DNA of 62,377 bases, filler included, from Platydemus manokwari (taxonomy: Eukaryota), in the NCBI GenBank assembly GCA_037951405.1. It is 6 parts of 6 records of this genome, joined end to end, with 100 filler letters (N's around TTAATTAATTAA, not from the genome) between each part and the next. Parts side by side here need not be neighbours in the genome. Positions count along the whole stretch, not along the records: positions 11,027 to 19,934 come from JBBMOY011331872.1; 5 more parts are not named here. One strand, given 5' to 3'. The notes under the pieces were generated by a model, which was given only the letters and a program-made list of their open reading frames with translations, was not told where the DNA came from and did not search any database. Positions 11,027 to 19,934 of the stretch are shown here, piece after piece. Positions within the stretch are counted from its first letter, which is position 1, and every line of letters starts with the position of its first letter. Position numbers and translations under genes: made by a program.

Positions 11027-11031
11027 TAATG

Positions 11032-11091
<60 letters not shown>

Positions 11092-11103
11092 GTAATAATA
11101 ATA
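11027..11103. repeat. (AAT)n microsatellite at contig end
   Basis: Long near-perfect AAT run. Confidence 0.95.
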
Positions 11104-11416
11104 CTAAAAGATAATAGTTAACATAATAATAACTATAAAATGTATTAATTATTATCAGATATTAATTATTATCTCATAATACTAAATATAATTATTATTA
11201 ATAAAAGTTAAAGATCAATGTAGGATAATCTATTATTTTGTGGTGATGATATTCGATTATCAATTTTATCTACCAATTCAAATCTATAGTTAAATGGTTT
11301 TAATAAATAAAGTCGAATTATTGTAGAAAAAATTTTAAATTATTAAAATAATAATTATTAATTTCATTTATTTATAATATATAAAATATTTTTCATAATA
11401 TTCGAATATTCTTTAG

Positions 11417-14400
11417 ATTCAAATGTCGATGCTGATGGTGATTCCAAAGAAAATATGGTGAAACATAAAATAGAATTTTATTCAATTCCTGAGGATTCCA
11501 TACTATTTTATATACAAGAACTATGTACCACTATTCTTGGTAACCCAGTACCGGTATTGACAATTTCTAATTGGCCAACGGAAACATCTGAGAGAACAGT
11601 CTGTCAAAAACCTTATATCTTTCTAACAAGTCGCGTCCATCCCGGTGAAAGTAATGCCAGCTGGGTGATGAAAGGGTGTATCGATTACTTGTTGAGTGAC
11701 AACCCTATCGCGGAACAATTGAGAAATCTTTATATATTTAAAATTATACCCATGCTCAATCCAGATGGTGTCATCAATGGATGGTGATTATTTTCTTATG
11801 GATTTCTTAATCCCTTAATTTCAGTCATCGCTGTTCAATGGCTGGCCATGATCTTAATCGTCGCTGGTTGGATCCATGTGAAGTTCTTGATCCGACAATT
11901 TACAACACAAAAGGCCTTCTAATGCTTCTTTCTAAATATGGACAGAGTCCTCTGGTGAGATTTCCTTTATGTTAATAGCTATTACCTGTATTCCAAAGCA
12001 ATTAATAAATCACATACAACTATTGAAAAACTTTCGACGCTACAAATTCTTTATCATTTCCATTGTATTTTGCAGATTCATCAAGAGAAGTATTCATGGA
12101 ACTCTAATTTCGTTTATTTTTAATAGATTCTCAATCGTATTCTAACTATATATGTGCTATTTGTTTTAGTTGCTTACATAAATAAAAGAAAATATCGAAA
12201 TTTTTGCAATGAAATCCTAACAAAGATAATTTTCTCGATTAAAAGATGAATAGTTTTCCAAAAATAAATGTCTCATTGAACAAAGAGACATGGAAACGAA
12301 AATCTGTTCAAAGGATTTAAAAAAACCAAATGTCTACTATTATAAAATTTATAAATTTGTGAAAAATAAAACCAATAATGCAATAAATCTTGCTCGAATT
12401 ACTATTTTTGTGAAAGGAATTGATGAAGACTACAATATTGATATTTAAATTAAATTGAAATATCTACGTAAATCAGATACAAACAGAATGATTGTTTATT
12501 GGCACTGTCTTTAACAGTGGCTGATTATTTCCTTGTAATGATGAGAGGTGATAAACATAAATGTAATAATTTTGATCAAATATCATTGGCTAGCTCAAAA
12601 TTGATAAAGTAACAATTCCGTACGGTTGTTTTCATTAAAATCGTTAAATTTAAAATGATGATTTATGGGAATTAGGTTTTTAAATTGAGTTCTCAATCTG
12701 AATGATAAATAATATTTATAATATTTCATTACAAATATTAAAATTATATTATTAACATATAAATAATATTTTCTACTTTTGTGTTTTTTTAATTCAGCAC
12801 TTAGTAATTAAATATGTTTTACTACTTTCTACTTTTTTCGTTTTGTTCTTCTTAATATTAAATCTAATTGAAAGATCAATGCACAAAACATCGAAGATAA
12901 AGAAAATAGATAATATAATATATCTAGAAAAGATGGAATATATCGACATGTTAGAAAGGTTAGAGAATATGGACATCAAAAATACATGATGGTTGAAGAG
13001 GATATGATCCAAACAGAAGAAGTTATTGATAATGATGAAATCATTCCACGCGTCAAGAAGAATACACTGTTGAAGATTCTGTACTTAGTGCTGAAGATGG
13101 TCAGGTCGATGACAGTTACAACATAAGTCCAAGCAATTTTTTCCATGCAATTGAAATCGTCATCAAAGCAAGTTCTTCTTCAAATAGCTCTACTCAAAAA
13201 ATAAACAATGATACAATAAAAAATTTAAAAGAAGTCAAAGATGATTTACAGAAATTCATTGTAAAGAAAACTACAAAAAACTTAAGATGATTTTTTAAAT
13301 AAATAATTGTATTTTTCTTAATAATTTCATCATTAATATGGCGATCATATAAATTTTAAATTCATTTATTATCTGAATTAACTAACAATCGGAAAGGAAA
13401 TCGATTTCTAATTTTTCGGATTAATGAAGGTTGACTGTATAGATAAAGAGAATTCTTGATAAAAATAAAGAATAAAAAGAAAATTCAATAAGAAATAATG
13501 TAAGACTCGGTGTTTAATTCTGAAGTCATAAATTTAAATAAAATGTAAACATATTAAAAATTGATTGTTTGTTTTGATATTGTAGTTAAATATACTTTTT
13601 TCGGTTGAATTTTTTAATTCCTATATTTAATGAAATAAATGTAGATTGTAAGCAAATACTCGGGTTACTTTTATCAATTATTATCATTTTGGCAATTCTG
13701 CTTGCTTGCTTATTTGAATTAAAATATTATATATATTTAATTGAATTATTATTATTTAAAAATAATTATCTGAGCTAATCAAACAATGATTACATGATAA
13801 TAAAATATAATGATCATTTATGATAAAATATTATTGCGTAATATGCTTCATAAGCATTTAAAACTCTCGAAATGATGCTATAAACATTTTAACCGATTAA
13901 TATCTTTTTACCAAGTAATACAGCAATTTTAAGATATTGTTTACAATTTTCTTCAAGAAGGAAAAGTAAAACAGCAGTACAGACACTTGTATATTTATGG
14001 CAATTTTCAAACATAAAATACTATTGTAAATGATGTTATTCCTTTCTTCCAAATTATTTCTCATTGTATTTTATCTTGACACAATTAAAAACAAGTTGGA
14101 AAAAAATATCTTGATAATTTAGAAATTCTAAACTATGTCGAATATTCTAAAATACCCATTGAAGACTCTGTTTAAAGAAATGTTATTTGTAGAATGAAAT
14201 TTCCATTAGTTCTTCATGCAGATTAATCAATGCATTTTTTCCAATTAATGGAATTTTTATGAAAAATTTGTCGAATATTTTTGAAATTTGCAATTTTCTA
14301 AAGCTTATAATTAGAACGGTGAAGGAACTGATAGCTTAGTAAATGAATTGCTTTCCTCTGCTGTAGACTGTAAGGCAGTAAACAACATTTTCCAATCGTT

Positions 14401-16801
14401 CGCCATGATTATATGTGTCACCTAGAACATGTTGAGGAATTAATTATAATTCTATTTCATTTCAAAATCAAACGATTTCATTTTGTTTTATAATCTATTT
14501 TAAATTATTCGATTATCTAAAACCGTCGCCTTTGATTTTGTTCAGGTTTTCTGTGATTTCCACGGCCATTCGAGACGAAAAAATGTTTTCATGTTCGGTT
14601 GTAGTCCTTTTATGTCTTGGATAAATGAAGACACAAACAATCCAACGTATATCGATTCGAGAAATGAAGATAAATCGTATTTAGTTTTGCCAAATATTCT
14701 GAACAACATTTCGCAATCGTTTTCTTTTGAATGTTGCAAGTATTTCACAATAATAATTATTATTATTTTCAGTTCTGATAATTATTAATAATGTTTTTTA
14801 TTAATATTATTATTTTATGATTTACCTGTCGTGCCAACACGAAATTCTTTTTACACGTTTGCACCAATTAATTCTGTCCTGTTACAAGACAAATGTTGTG
14901 CCGTTATGTTTACTAGTGGTTCCTAACGCCATTTGATTTGTTTATAATTGTTAATATTATTAGCCGCTACTATTTTAAAACCCACACAGTAAAAACGAAT
15001 TGAAAAGTTAAGATACCTGAAATCTATTTAAATACAAATATTTAAACAAATAAATTTCATTTTATACAATATGATTTTATATAAAATTAGAATTAAATTT
15101 GAATTAGAAATTTAATTCATTTCAAATTTGATTCATTTAAAATATCTCACAAATATAATTATTAGTACGTCTAAGCAGTAAATTTTTTCCCAATGATTAA
15201 TTTCTTTCGTGATTTACATTTTTTCTATTTTTCTCAAAGCATGACCTTATATTATATACTTATATATAACATTCATATTTTATAACTGTTGGGGTTTATT
15301 ATCTCTCCTTTTTATCATAGTCATTAAATCCATCTAAGTATCTAAATGATTTTATAATCATAAGAATTTCTTCATCGTTCCTTTGCTAATTAATCTTTTT
15401 ATTTTCCATGATTATTGTCGATATTTACATCTTCAATTTTTACCAGAATTATCATGTTTTGGTGATTTTTATCCAAGTTGTTTTAGCAAATATCTTTATT
15501 AATGTTTTTTCAAATATTTGATTTGCATCTTCATTTTTGACTTCTATCTGAGTTTATTCATCACTCAGATTTCCTTATTATTGACTATCTTTTGCAAAAA
15601 ATACAATTTTGTTCTTGTTAAGTTCTACATGATAATAAAGCATTTGTTGAATATTTGCAATTCATATCCATCAATTTTCTTTCACTTCTTTTTCATCATT
15701 TTTTTCAATATTTATAACCTGTATCACGCATTGGATATTTTCTGTCTCATTTGGTTAATTTATGGAGATTATTTTCATGACAACCTCTCACAGAAAACTA
15801 GTTTTCTAAGAATTGTTCTACAAATTTACTTTCTCATGTTAACATTTGTTGATGTGAGTTTTGTTTTAATTTTTACTTGAATTGAAATTTATTATCGATA
15901 CATTTTATTAATTTAAATTAATGATGGATTGTGTCGACATTTATACAACAGCAAATATATGACTTTGAGTTCTTAATTATGATTTTTATTGGAAAATAAA
16001 GATCTATTAGCAATATATTTCAATAATATTAGATAAATAGTGAAAAAACGTGTGTCTATTCTATATTAAATCAATTAAACTTATCCAGTTTAATCCCTTA
16101 GAATTTTTCCCACGAGATAGACAAATCTTTTCTTCACAATTCTCATTGAAGCTTAAAATATTCACCTTCATTTCGTCGTTATTGTGATTATTTTTCACTA
16201 GATGATCATTTTGATAATCTCATAATACCTAATGAATACCGTTCTTATTTCCATGACTACACAATTAATTAGAATTCCAAAATCTGAGATACTGAAAATA
16301 CTCCATTCAAAATCAAATATTCTGTTTTGACAGTCCATTTTGTATGATATCGTTGAGATAATCACTTAAGCATTTTACATATTAAACCATTTTTCATTGT
16401 AAGCAATTATTTTCACAAACCCAGCTTAAAGATGAACTAAATATCTGATCATTGATATTTGGGATTATTGCATTTTGAAATTATTCTAACAAGTTGATCA
16501 TTGGACATTTATTCAGTTTTGCTGTTGAAAAATCGAAAGAATCGACGGCACGTGTCGTTGTTTGGCGTCAATTCGGTGTACAAAGAAGCTATACAATGGA
16601 ATCATCGTATTGTAGTTGCGATCAGGGTAGTTACAAGCATCTCCATATCAATGTTCCAATGTTAGAAGAAATTGGCAGCCAATTTGCAGAAGCATTATTA
16701 CATATAGATGATTCGATCAGTAGTCATTCATCTAGGAATTCTACAGTTCCTAAACTGAGCCAGGACTACAATTTCAATGAATTGATAACCAATAATAAAA
16801 T
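11417..16801 (+). CDS. AGTPBP1: Cytosolic carboxypeptidase (M14D tubulin deglutamylase, CCP1/Nna1-like); exons 11417-11783, 11825-11954, 14546-14739, 16517-16801; 5' part missing beyond the contig join, 3' end unresolved
   Basis: Motifs [12 protein letters not shown] (zinc HxxE), [13 protein letters not shown]|[59 protein letters not shown] (catalytic E). All GT-AG junctions keep frame. Confidence 0.9.
12340..12450 (+). mobile_element. hAT (GTF2IRD2/Charlie-type) transposase relic in CCP intron
   Basis: Translation [24 protein letters not shown] resembles the recalled motif DESTD..D.AQL.IF.RG.DE.FNI. Confidence 0.45.
13000..13439 (+). mobile_element. pogo/Tigger-like 3' end relic
   Basis: Ends TTCGGATTAATGAAGGTTGACTG-TA, a typical pogo TIR plus TA target. 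Upstream is a decayed acidic coding-like stretch. Left boundary is approximate. Confidence 0.4.
14958..15151 (-). mobile_element. Solo LTR of the TRIM-like family (194 bp) in CCP intron
   Basis: Homologous to 17951-18086 and 18323-18476 (AGCCGCTACTATTTTA...TGAAAAGT...TATTTAAACAAAT...TCACA). Perfect 5-bp TSD AATAT/AATAT. Confidence 0.85.
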
Positions 16802-17203
16802 GTAAGTATATATTGATTTTATTCAATGAATCCTTTTTTCATTTAAATTATTTTATCGATTATTTGTGTGGCATAGGTGAGTATAATAGTTCATTTATAT
16901 ATTGTAGATTATTCTTACCTCAAAAATATTGTAAAAATTTGTTCAATTTCTTTTCATATTTTGTTATTTTCAAAATATTTGTGTTTATATGTAAAACACG
17001 ATTTGTCTAATCGACTTTATAAATTGGAACTCACTCCAATGAACAAATCAATTAAGATACTTTTCTGTTGTCATAAACATTTAATAATATGAATCAATAA
17101 CATCAAACCCGTCTCTTTGCATGTAACCCTTCTCGTGAATTAATTTCAAATCTATATTTTCGTGTGTTTTGAATGTTAATTAAATTATCGATCATAGCAT
17201 GAT

Positions 17204-17408
17204 TGTAAGCCGCTACTATTTTATAAAACACCCATATAAAACAAACTGAAAAGTCACCACATCAAATTCTATTTGAATACAATTATTTAAACAAATACAC
17301 ATAATTCTATATAAAATCAAACTTCACCCAAAATTAAACTTTATATAAAATCAATTTCTATACAAAATTAAATGTTTAAAAATTTTAATTCAATTTATAA
17401 TGTTCATA
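17204..17408 (-). mobile_element. Solo LTR of the TRIM-like family (205 bp)
   Basis: TGTAAGCCGCTACTATTTTATAAAAC...GTTCATA. Flanks ATGAT/ATGGT (4/5). Confidence 0.8.
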
Positions 17409-17950
17409 ATGGTGATGATGGATATTGCTCAAGGTGCATGCTCGATTATAAAATTGAAAATTTTAATATTTTCATTTAATTTTCTTCAAATTTCTCCGCT
17501 TTTTGAATTTATTCTTTCACATTTATTATTATACAGTTTTTGTATTAGCTTATTAATTACAAAATAAATAAAATAAAACCATGATGTCCAATAATCATCT
17601 CGATCAATGTTTTTTAAGCGTTTAATATGAAGACAAATTGGAACTCATAGCTTATTTCTCTCGATACATCAATAATTATTAATTCTTATCCGTTCATCAT
17701 CACATACCAGTTTAAAGTCACTGATAGGTTCATATGAAATGATTAAACAAGATTTAATTTTATTATGAAGTGTTATTTATTTGTAGTTTCGGATTTGAAT
17801 CGATTAAATATCGCTATCATATAAATTGATGCATGAACATTGTAGCGTGTTTATCCAAATCGATGTTTGAAATAATAAAATATGAAAACCACTAATTGAA
17901 AGATTGTAATATTAAATGAAATTAATTTTACCGTCCATTTTTATGTAATT

Positions 17951-18476
17951 TGTGAAGATTTAAAATTTGAATTTAAAAATGTTTTATAAAATAATATCAA
18001 AAGATATTCATTTGTTTAAATAATTGTTCTTAAATAGACAATAGTTCAATTTCAATACGTGTTTTATAAAATAGTAGCGGCTTATATGGCGAACACGCAT
18101 TTAGATTTGATTCTGAGAATTTCTATGGCGTAGAGGTATAGAAGAGAAGATAAAAAAAGAGGTAGAAAATATAAAATGAAGATATAAAGAAAATAAAGAA
18201 GATTCGAAGAATATTGAAAGATAAAATAAATAGAAATTTTCATTTAGAGAAATATATGGAGAATTCATCGCAGAGATAATTAGGAACAACACAAACGATC
18301 AAATATTTTAAAGAAAGAGAGGTGTGAGGATTTAAAATATTAATTTAAAAATGATTTATAAATTAATATCAAAAGATGTTAATTTGTTTAAATAATTGAT
18401 CTTAAATAGACTATTTGATGCCGTGACTTTTCAGTTCGTTTTTAATGAGGGCTTTATAAAATAGTAGCCGCATACA
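17951..18476 (+). mobile_element. TRIM-like miniature non-autonomous LTR retrotransposon (526 bp)
   Basis: LTR1 17951-18086 (TGTGAAG...GCGGCTTATA). PBS TGGCGAACACG at 18087. Non-coding interior of 236 bp. PPT AAAGAAAGAGAGG ends at 18322. LTR2 18323-18476 (TGTGAGG...GCCGCATACA). Flanks TAATT/TGATT. Confidence 0.85.
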
Positions 18477-19934
18477 TGATTAATGTCTTATTTAATATCT
18501 CGTTTCTGAAATTTATTACATTGTTTTCGAATTAATATCTCAATTATTATTAATAAACATAATAATAATAATGAATTTCGGCCTTTCGATTATATTATTA
18601 TCTTTAATATAAATACTTTTATAATTTAATATTATTTTATCGATTTATTTTCAAAATATTTGAATGGACAAGTCTGTCTTTTTCTATCTTATCGCACATC
18701 AATAATTTCCTATCGATCCATCTGTTTGATTTATTGATAAAATCAGAATCCATAATATTTCCTATTAACACTAATAATTATATTTTTTCCGAAAAATTTC
18801 TCTGAAATTTAATTTTAGTAATTATTATTCTCAGATAGATTTCTACCGAAAATCGTGAAACCAGAAAATTATAAATGTTTGAATTTTAATATGTTAATAT
18901 TGTTTTCGTTTTGCTTTTTTATAATTTTTAATTATTTTAATTATCCTGTCGATCTCTTGTTAGAGATAAGATAGTAATTTTATTAATTATAAGTAATTAT
19001 AAATTCTATCCCCAAATATGCTATGTGACAGTATTATAAAATATTTGATTATCATACATATATCTGTTCATTCACCTGTTTTCATCAAGCAACTCAATGA
19101 ATTTAATGATAAACATTCTATATTCCCAGTGGCCGTGTTCAGTTTATTTACATTTTCCTATTTATTCGGCTTATATACATTTTTTATTGTAATCCCATTC
19201 TTTCTGATGTCGGTATGAGCACATGTTGTATTAATAATTAATCTCTCATTCTGTATTGCAATTCAATTTGGAAGTCTAATATTTATTTTCATCGTTTTTT
19301 CAATGAATTTAAATCATAATTTTTCGATGAAACGAAACTTGGTTGAATGAAAATTCAAATCAAACTATTTCCTCCTCTAAAAAAACAAACAGAGGTAAAA
19401 ATCTGATATCTAATATTCGAATTGTGTAAAATTGGGAAATCTGATTAGATTAGTTTATTCTTTATTGTTTCATGATTTCAATTCAATTGGCTTATCTATT
19501 AACTTGGTTAAATCAATTTTCATTTGATGCCATTATTTTCACGGTTTAGTTTTATCATAATTATTGAGTTATTATTCTTTTCTGATACACAATCACAATA
19601 TTTTTAAAAATATTTTATAAATCCATGTAAGATCATCAATCTTGAACGCTATAGTATCAGATTTGTTTGACTATCCACCATTCTATCGAACTTTGAAAAT
19701 AATAGGAAAATCATTTAAAAACACAATTTTCTACTTCTCGTTTCGAGGAATGTGATGGAAAAATCCTATTAATAAAGCTTGACATGCAAGTCTCGAATCT
19801 TGAAAATTTCTGAAATTTGATAACTTATGTGAAACTCAATTACCTATTTCTTACTAGTAACAAATGCATCCGAAACACTGTTTAGTATGCGACTTTCTGC
19901 ATCAGTTATCTGATACCACCTTGTAAATTTATTT

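What the first reader, a model, noticed from the sequence alone, without database searches (positions are those of the whole stretch)
17951..18476. Complete 526-bp non-coding miniature LTR retrotransposon (TRIM-like)
Seen: two direct repeats of 136 and 154 bp starting TGTGA and ending TTATA / ATACA. TGGCGAACACG begins right after the first repeat and a pure purine tract AAAGAAAGAGAGG abuts the second. The interior is only 236 bp, A/G-rich and non-coding, and the 5-bp flanks are TAATT/TGATT. Established: LTR-PBS-PPT-LTR without ORFs defines TRIMs, described mostly in plants with few animal examples (e.g. taeniid cestodes). Inference: a parasitic mini-retroelement mobilised in trans, possibly an undescribed family. 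The PBS resembles the TGGCGA.. tRNA-Arg type.
Basis: partly seen in the sequence, partly recalled or inferred. Interest (0 to 1): 0.8.

Follow-up and report, generated by a model that had tools for sequence, protein, structure and literature searches.

The report
Old miniature LTR retrotransposon (TRIM) copy
This is a real but old and decayed 526-bp non-coding miniature LTR retrotransposon (TRIM type) from a very abundant repeat family of an AT-rich eukaryotic genome, an ordinary kind of selfish DNA already known from plants and several animal groups.

Summary
LTRs lie at 17951-18086 (136 bp) and 18323-18476 (154 bp), 86% identical with one 18-bp gap. TGGCGAACACG abuts the first LTR and the purine run AAAGAAAGAGAGG abuts the second. 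The interior is 236 bp, 69% purine and stop-filled, and the flanks are TAATT/TGATT. Two more copies of the same LTR lie on the minus strand of this piece as solo LTRs with 5-bp duplications: 14958-15151 (ATATT/ATATT) and 17204-17408 (ACCAT/ATCAT). Contigs of the one public run holding the locus pile up on the LTRs at roughly 1,000-3,000 times the single-copy depth. They cover the interior at roughly 10-100 times, with 24-75 distinct contigs at single interior sites. Most other copies read C at 18093, giving TGGCGACCACG. That is the exact complement of the last 11 nt of tRNA-Arg(UCG) as printed for human and zebrafish. No tRNA, 5S or ribozyme motif is present, so it is a plain TRIM. It differs from ant PbTRIM and tapeworm ta-TRIM in using an Arg rather than a Leu primer site, and from PbTRIM and Echinococcus ta-TRIM in a 5-bp rather than 4-bp duplication. 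This copy is inactive. The host species, its tRNAs, the autonomous partner and expression could not be tested. Verdict: new member of a known kind, modest interest.

The parts
17946..17950 (+). left target-site duplication TAATT
   Evidence: 4/5 match to the right flank, chance about 3.6%
17951..18086 (+). 5' LTR, 136 bp, TGTGAA...CTTATA; lacks 18 bp that the other three LTR copies have
   Evidence: most other copies in the run read C at 18085, so their LTR ends in CA
18087..18097 (+). primer-binding site TGGCGAACACG; 10/11 complementary to the tRNA-Arg(UCG) 3' end
   Evidence: other copies mostly read C at 18093 (118 contigs); the tRNA-Arg-UCG 3' end ...cgtggtcgcca is printed
18087..18322 (+). 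non-coding internal domain, 236 bp, 69% purine
   Evidence: covered by 24-75 distinct contigs from other copies at sites 18216-18270
18310..18322 (+). polypurine tract AAAGAAAGAGAGG abutting the 3' LTR
   Evidence: one of only two purine runs of 12 nt or more on the + strand in 8.9 kb
18323..18476 (+). 3' LTR, 154 bp, TGTGAG...CATACA
18477..18481 (+). right target-site duplication TGATT
17204..17408 (-). solo LTR of a related subfamily, 205 bp, TATGAA...CTTACA. Flanks are ACCAT/ATCAT (17409-17413 and 17199-17203). It contains a 34-bp tandem duplication at 17303-17370.
   Evidence: high contig depth over 17204-17400. The 5' boundary is less certain than for the other copies.
14958..15151 (-). 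solo LTR of a related subfamily, 194 bp, TGTGAG...CTAATA, with perfect 5-bp duplication ATATT/ATATT (15152-15156 and 14953-14957)
   Evidence: chance of a 5/5 match about 0.4%; highest contig depth in the stretch

Best explanation
The 526-bp stretch is one old, inactive copy of a non-autonomous miniature LTR retrotransposon of the TRIM type. It belongs to a large, heterogeneous LTR family of this AT-rich eukaryotic genome. Inferred mechanism, from the standard LTR-retroelement cycle: an RNA running from R in the 5' LTR to R in the 3' LTR was packaged by Gag/Pol supplied in trans by an autonomous LTR element. Minus-strand synthesis was primed by the 3' end of tRNA-Arg(UCG) annealed to the primer site next to the 5' LTR. 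Plus-strand synthesis was primed from the polypurine tract next to the 3' LTR. The cDNA was integrated by an integrase that makes 5-bp staggered cuts. Shown here: the two LTRs, the primer site and purine tract at the exact junctions, the absence of coding capacity, the near-perfect 5-bp duplication, solo LTRs with 5-bp duplications nearby, and the high copy number of the LTR and multi-copy state of the interior. Since insertion the copy has diverged. The LTRs are 14% different, the 5' LTR has an 18-bp gap and ends TA where most copies end CA, and the primer site differs at one base from most copies. Inferred, not shown: trans-mobilisation, the identity of the helper, transcription, and the U3/R/U5 layout. 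A tentative layout places a TATA-like TTTATAAAATA at 17983-17993 and an AATAA-containing block, conserved in all four copies, near 18012-18038.
For: Repeats and junction motifs. Four LTR copies in 3.5 kb share the TGTGA start, the conserved blocks and the ...AAAATAGTAGCGGCTTACA end. AAAATAGTAGCGGC occurs 4 times against 0.01 expected by chance. Target-site duplications are 4/5, 4/5 and 5/5. Chance rates are 3.6%, 3.1% and 0.44%, a joint chance of about 5e-6 if the boundaries are taken as fixed; 11,322 contigs of run X1 lie on the stretch. Single-copy flanks have depth about 13. LTR sites reach 5,000-50,000, the primer-site position 18093 reaches 24,008, interior sites reach 445-1,490, and the last 35 nt before the purine tract reach about 115-130. 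Three single-copy contigs span interior, purine tract and 3' LTR at 84-87% identity (table 8). The majority primer site TGGCGACCACG is the reverse complement of ...cgtggtcgcca, the 3' end of human tRNA-Arg-UCG and of the zebrafish 3'tRF-Arg-TCG. The same PBS in human ERV9 is labelled Arg by one source. The two LTRs of the element share their U3 part at 90%, while the solo LTRs differ strongly there, so the two belong to one insertion.
Against: No second full-length LTR-236 bp-LTR copy could be retrieved, because contigs break at repeats. Many copies share the sequence only up to 18119 and then continue differently: 82 contigs do so with a common other continuation. The contigs that span the 3' interior do not align upstream of about 18223. 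Summed contig depth is not a true copy number, and the A/G-rich interior could attract some spurious 80% matches. The host's own tRNAs were not available. One paper disputes the Arg label of the matching human PBS. The duplication of the element itself has one mismatch. No autonomous partner and no RNA data are available.
Confidence: 0.8

Rival explanations
1. It is a one-off internal deletion derivative of a longer (autonomous or LARD-like) LTR element of the same family, not a member of a propagating TRIM family. The interior would then be the parent's 5' leader joined to its 3' untranslated end.
For:: 82 contigs share the LTR, primer site and leader only up to 18119 and then continue with a common, different sequence. 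Contigs that cover 18223-18420 carry 196-270 further bases upstream that do not align. Two joints (18119 to 18301, and 18191 to 18298) show relatives with another middle part. Interior depth is 10-100 times lower than LTR depth.
Against: The bin average (751 over 18140-18306) together with the site depths implies several hundred or more across the whole interior, with no evident single-copy gap. 24-75 distinct contigs cover interior sites. Ant TRIMs of one family also share LTRs but not interiors. Either way the object is a miniature non-coding LTR element.
Confidence: 0.15
2. Two independent solo LTRs or short interspersed repeats (SINE- or MITE-like) landed 236 bp apart in the same orientation by chance, and the PBS and PPT are coincidences.
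For: The LTR unit is extremely abundant, with four copies in 3.5 kb here, so close neighbours are expected. The genome is AT-rich, so short flank matches are cheap.
Against: One of only two TGGCGA and one of only two long purine runs in 8.9 kb sit exactly at the inner LTR edges. The two LTRs share a U3 subtype (90%) that the solo copies lack. Most other copies of the LTR are also followed by the same primer site. The outer flanks match 4/5. There are no terminal inverted repeats beyond TGT/ACA and no tRNA-like head.
Confidence: 0.03
3. The most abundant unit, U5 plus the tRNA-complementary leader read on the opposite strand, is a retroposon derived from strong-stop DNA or from a tRNA, rather than an LTR.
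For: Depth is highest over the last 60 bp or so of the LTR plus the primer site. The leader after the primer site is 24/30 identical to the continuation seen beyond another LTR subfamily. It also holds GATTTGATTC (GATTCGATTC in that other subfamily), which resembles the complement of a tRNA T-loop.
Against: ARAGORN and Rfam find no tRNA on either strand. The spacing does not fit a tRNA 3' half; by hand it is 2 nt too long. Solo copies have full-length LTR boundaries with TG..CA ends and 5-bp duplications. U5/PBS conservation across subfamilies is normal for LTR elements.
Confidence: 0.02

Closest known systems
Plant TRIMs (Witte et al. 2001 definition, as summarised in PMC6934838 and PMC3532108)
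   Same: Under 1 kb; terminal direct repeats of 100-250 bp; an internal domain that starts with a PBS and ends with a PPT; no coding capacity; 5-bp target-site duplication; solo LTRs.
   Different: No sequence relationship is expected. Plant TRIMs carry a tRNA-Met PBS, whereas this one carries a tRNA-Arg(UCG)-type PBS. The host here is an unidentified AT-rich eukaryote.
PbTRIM of ants (PMC3532108)
   Same: Size 480-781 bp, LTRs 152-184 bp, non-coding interior, abundant solo LTRs, insertion in AT-rich DNA in or near genes, and relatives that share LTRs but not interiors.
   Different: PbTRIM has a tRNA-Leu PBS and 4-bp duplications, commonly ATAT. Here the PBS is Arg-type and the duplications are 5 bp in three out of three insertions.
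ta-TRIM of taeniid tapeworms (PMC4558846)
   Same: A non-autonomous LTR element with many solo LTRs and many decayed copies. Duplications are 5 bp in Taenia. A helper is inferred from shared LTR ends, PBS and duplication length.
   Different: ta-TRIM uses a tRNA-Leu PBS of 8 nt, has 4-bp duplications in Echinococcus, and is longer (fragments over 800 bp were collected for phylogenetics).
TRIMp3 groups: Cassandra, Helenus, Ajax (PMC10886601); retrozymes
   Same: Miniature LTR elements with PBS and PPT. Hymenopteran Helenus families can use tRNA-Arg. Ajax and fungal/plant Helenus make 5-bp duplications.
   Different: Those carry a 5S rRNA, tRNA-like or hammerhead sequence in the LTR. None is detected here. 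Animal Helenus makes 4-bp duplications.
biv-TRIM of bivalves (PMC6934838)
   Same: A small element with terminal direct repeats and no known helper.
   Different: biv-TRIM has no canonical PBS. Here a canonical PBS abuts the 5' LTR.

Membership tests
[quoted passage not shown] | Total length under about 1 kb with two terminal direct repeats of about 100-250 bp | tested here: met
   526 bp; LTRs of 136 and 154 bp, 86% identical
[quoted passage not shown] | LTRs begin TG and end CA | tested here: met
   The 3' LTR is TG...CA. The 5' LTR is TG...TA in this copy, but most other copies read C at 18085. Solo C ends CA and solo D ends TA.
[quoted passage not shown] | PBS complementary to a tRNA 3' end, directly after the 5' LTR | tested here: inconclusive
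   This copy matches 10/11, and the majority of copies 11/11, to the tRNA-Arg-UCG 3' end of human and zebrafish. The host's own tRNAs were not available.
[quoted passage not shown] | Polypurine tract directly before the 3' LTR | tested here: met
   A 13-nt pure purine run at 18310-18322; only two such runs on the + strand in 8.9 kb
[quoted passage not shown] | No coding capacity in the internal domain | tested here: met
   Stops in all + frames; the minus-strand 63-aa low-complexity ORF has no Pfam match
[quoted passage not shown] | Target-site duplication of fixed length around full elements and solo LTRs | tested here: met
   5-bp duplications: TAATT/TGATT, ACCAT/ATCAT, ATATT/ATATT
[quoted passage not shown] | Repeated family, with the same short form at several loci | tested here: inconclusive
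   The LTR is very abundant and the interior is multi-copy in run X1, but no second end-to-end copy could be read
[quoted passage not shown] | Mobilised in trans by an autonomous LTR element with matching LTR ends and PBS | not testable with these tools
   No genome assembly of the host was reachable. Metagenome scans gave nothing related.
Cassandra / Helenus / Ajax (TRIMp3) and retrozymes | 5S rRNA-, tRNA-derived or hammerhead sequence inside the LTR | tested here: not met
   ARAGORN found 0 genes. An Rfam E-value scan of the piece gave no tRNA, 5S or hammerhead match.
PbTRIM (ants) | tRNA-Leu PBS and 4-bp duplication | tested here: not met
   Arg-type PBS and 5-bp duplications here, against the description

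The most novel reading that the evidence does not exclude
The element represents an undescribed animal TRIM lineage that pairs a tRNA-Arg(UCG) primer site with 5-bp integration. From my own knowledge, 5-bp duplications are more typical of Copia or BEL/Pao than of the Gypsy helpers inferred for most animal TRIMs. This lineage would have become one of the dominant repeats of its host genome. The conserved 30-nt leader after the primer site would serve as an extra tRNA- or packaging-recognition signal shared across subfamilies.
Probability: 0.25. Interest if true: 0.45.

Novelty: new member of a known kind. Interest (0 to 1): 0.3.

Why it matters
For annotating this genome, it identifies a very abundant roughly 140-200-bp repeat as an LTR family with TRIM-type members. 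Such a repeat could easily be mislabelled as a SINE, a MITE or unknown, and here it sits in or near a gene. It adds another non-plant TRIM with a different primer tRNA and integration footprint from the best-described ant and tapeworm families, which supports repeated independent origins of TRIMs. It does not open a new mechanism.

Tried and rejected
1. Fetching other copies. Two scans of metagenome contigs with the U5/PBS motif gave 0 hits and 21 hits. All 21 were chance 16-30-nt matches in unrelated DNA of 33-53% GC.

2. Finding the source contig or organism by exact ORF products. Nothing was on record. The protein atlas confirmed Peptidase_M14 for the exon but gave no usable taxon. The run's organism is coded.

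4. The tRNA-derived or pol III TRIM idea: no tRNA, 5S or ribozyme was found.

5. Extended pairing of the leader with the tRNA-Arg T-arm. By hand, against the human sequence, pairing stops after 11 nt, so I rejected this as unsupported.

6. The two minus-strand LTRs (2,245 bp apart) as the ends of one longer element. I set this aside because each has its own matching 5-bp duplication.

7. ORFs 14591-14788 and 16494-16805 as further carboxypeptidase exons. From memory they resemble M14 motifs, but Pfam and PDB searches gave nothing. It is therefore open whether the element is intronic.

8. Expression could not be tested: no RNA run holds the stretch.

Full report
**Observation.**
- Two direct repeats lie at 17951-18086 (136 bp) and 18323-18476 (154 bp).
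- They begin TGTGAA and TGTGAG, and end CTTATA and CATACA.
- They match at 117 of 136 aligned positions (86%, K2P 0.155), with a single 18-bp gap in the first repeat.
- TGGCGAACACG begins at 18087, the first base after repeat 1.
- The pure purine run AAAGAAAGAGAGG (18310-18322) ends at the last base before repeat 2.
- On the + strand of the 8.9-kb piece there are only two TGGCGA and only two purine runs of 12 nt or more. One of each sits exactly at an inner LTR edge.
- The 236-bp interior is 69% purine and overlaps the most purine-rich window of that size in the piece (71%, starting 18127). It has stops in all forward frames. Its only ORF is a low-complexity 63-aa reading of the pyrimidine strand with no Pfam match.
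- The 5-bp flanks are TAATT and TGATT. A 4/5 or better match happens at about 3.6% of random placements in this piece.

**More copies in the same piece.** A repeat search over the whole piece found two further copies of the unit on the minus strand. The motif AAAATAGTAGCGGC occurs four times against 0.01 expected. I read both copies in the LTR orientation.
- Copy D, 14958-15151, is 194 bp and runs TGTGAG...CTAATA. It is flanked by a perfect ATATT/ATATT, which has a chance of about 0.4%.
- Copy C, 17204-17408, is 205 bp and runs TATGAA...CTTACA. It is flanked by ACCAT/ATCAT (4/5). Its 5' boundary is less certain than for the other copies.
- Both contain the 18 bp that the element's 5' LTR lacks, so that gap is a later loss in that LTR.
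- All four copies share the TGTGA start, a conserved block ATTTGTTTAAATAATTG..TTAAATAGA, and the end TTTATAAAATAGTAGCGGCTTACA. They differ strongly in the 5' (U3-like) part.
- The two LTRs of the element are 90% alike in that variable part, which ties them to a single insertion.
- Solo LTRs with 5-bp duplications are the expected product of LTR-LTR recombination. They argue that the unit is a true LTR inserted by an integrase.

**Genome-wide picture.** Only one public run holds the locus. It is kept as contigs and its organism is coded. I laid it at 80% likeness on 14800-19800, and 11,322 contigs matched.

| Region | Summed depth |
|---|---|
| Single-copy flanks | about 13 |
| LTR sites | 5,000-50,000 |
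| Position 18093 in the primer site | 24,008 |
| Leader, 18103-18108 | about 6,000 |
| Interior sites, 18216-18270 | 445-1,490 |
| Last 35 nt before the purine tract | about 115-130 |

- Depth is highest over the last 60 bp or so of the LTR.
- At single interior sites, 24-75 distinct contigs show a shared alternative letter.
- Summed contig depth is not a copy number. The order of magnitude is thousands of LTR-related copies and tens of interior-related copies.
- Three single-copy contigs span the 3' interior, purine tract and 3' LTR at 84-87% identity.
- Many copies share only LTR, primer site and leader up to 18119. 82 of those contigs then continue with a common different sequence. Some joints point to relatives with another middle part.
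- The family is therefore real and the interior is not single-copy. I could not read a second end-to-end copy of the 236-bp form, so the deletion-derivative rival keeps about 15%.

**Primer site.**
- In most other copies position 18093 reads C (118 contigs, 21,540 of 24,008 depth), and 18085 reads C, which makes the LTR end CA.
- The majority primer site TGGCGACCACG is the exact reverse complement of ...cgtggtcgcca. That is the 3' end, with CCA, of human tRNA-Arg-UCG as printed in a preprint and of the zebrafish 3'tRF-Arg-TCG.
- The same PBS is known from human ERV9, where one source labels it Arg and a database labels it Trp. The tRNA sequences support Arg.
- This copy matches 10 of 11.
- The host's own tRNAs could not be examined. 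There is no tRNA gene in the piece.

**What it is not.**
- ARAGORN and an Rfam E-value scan find no tRNA, 5S rRNA or hammerhead in the piece. It is therefore not a Cassandra, Helenus or Ajax type element, nor a retrozyme.
- It differs from ant PbTRIM, which has a tRNA-Leu PBS and 4-bp duplications.
- It differs from tapeworm ta-TRIM, which has a tRNA-Leu PBS and is longer.
- It differs from bivalve biv-TRIM, which has no canonical PBS.
- TRIMs are also reported from Anopheles and, by automated annotation, from honey bee. An animal TRIM is no longer a rarity.

**Mechanism.** The best explanation is the standard one for a non-autonomous LTR element.
- Transcription runs from the 5' LTR.
- The RNA is packaged and reverse-transcribed by proteins of an autonomous helper.
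- The minus strand is primed by tRNA-Arg(UCG) at the primer site.
- The plus strand is primed at the purine tract.
- Integration leaves a 5-bp duplication.

These steps are inferred from the anatomy; none was observed. This copy carries 14% LTR divergence, an 18-bp loss in one LTR, a non-CA LTR end and a primer-site difference from most copies. It is therefore an old, inactive relic. From my own knowledge, 5-bp duplications are more typical of Copia and BEL/Pao integrases than of Gypsy, but without the helper this stays a lead.

**Context.** The piece is 25% GC. It carries a verified Peptidase_M14 (carboxypeptidase) exon at 11455-11787 on the + strand. Two later ORFs that looked like further exons from memory got no support, so it is not settled whether the element is intronic.

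**Verdict.** This is a new member of a known kind, of modest interest.

Noticed in passing
window 11455-11787 (+): This ORF is an exon-like piece of a zinc carboxypeptidase (Pfam Peptidase_M14, E 1e-11; the HPGESNASW motif is typical of cytosolic carboxypeptidases). The LTR copies lie 3-7 kb downstream on both strands. ORFs at 14591-14788 and 16494-16805 looked like further exons but had no Pfam or PDB support.
   Followed up: partly
window 17303-17370 (-): There is a 34-bp tandem duplication inside solo LTR C (76% identical copies). Contig depth drops from about 10,000 to 160-700 over 17328-17339, and several contigs skip 62-68 bp here, so the duplication is private to few copies.
   Followed up: partly
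window 18087-18116 (+): The 30 nt starting at the primer site are 24/30 identical to the consensus continuation seen in 203 contigs beyond another LTR subfamily (the loose end before 17204, reverse-complemented). Five of the six differences are transitions. The stretch holds GATTTGATTC (GATTCGATTC in the other subfamily), which resembles the complement of a tRNA T-loop but is out of register for a tRNA 3' half. It may be a conserved leader signal.
   Followed up: partly
window 18119 onward (+): 82 contigs share the LTR, primer site and leader up to 18119. They then continue with a common other sequence (GATCAATGACTGAAAATTATAGAAAAGAAG, agreement 0.75). This is a more abundant relative with a different interior, possibly the helper or another non-autonomous form.
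   Followed up: no
window 11027-11110 (+): A (TAA)n microsatellite sits at the start of the piece. A similar AT-rich low-complexity run at 18545-18575 probably explains the raised contig depth in the bin just after the 3' LTR.
   Followed up: no
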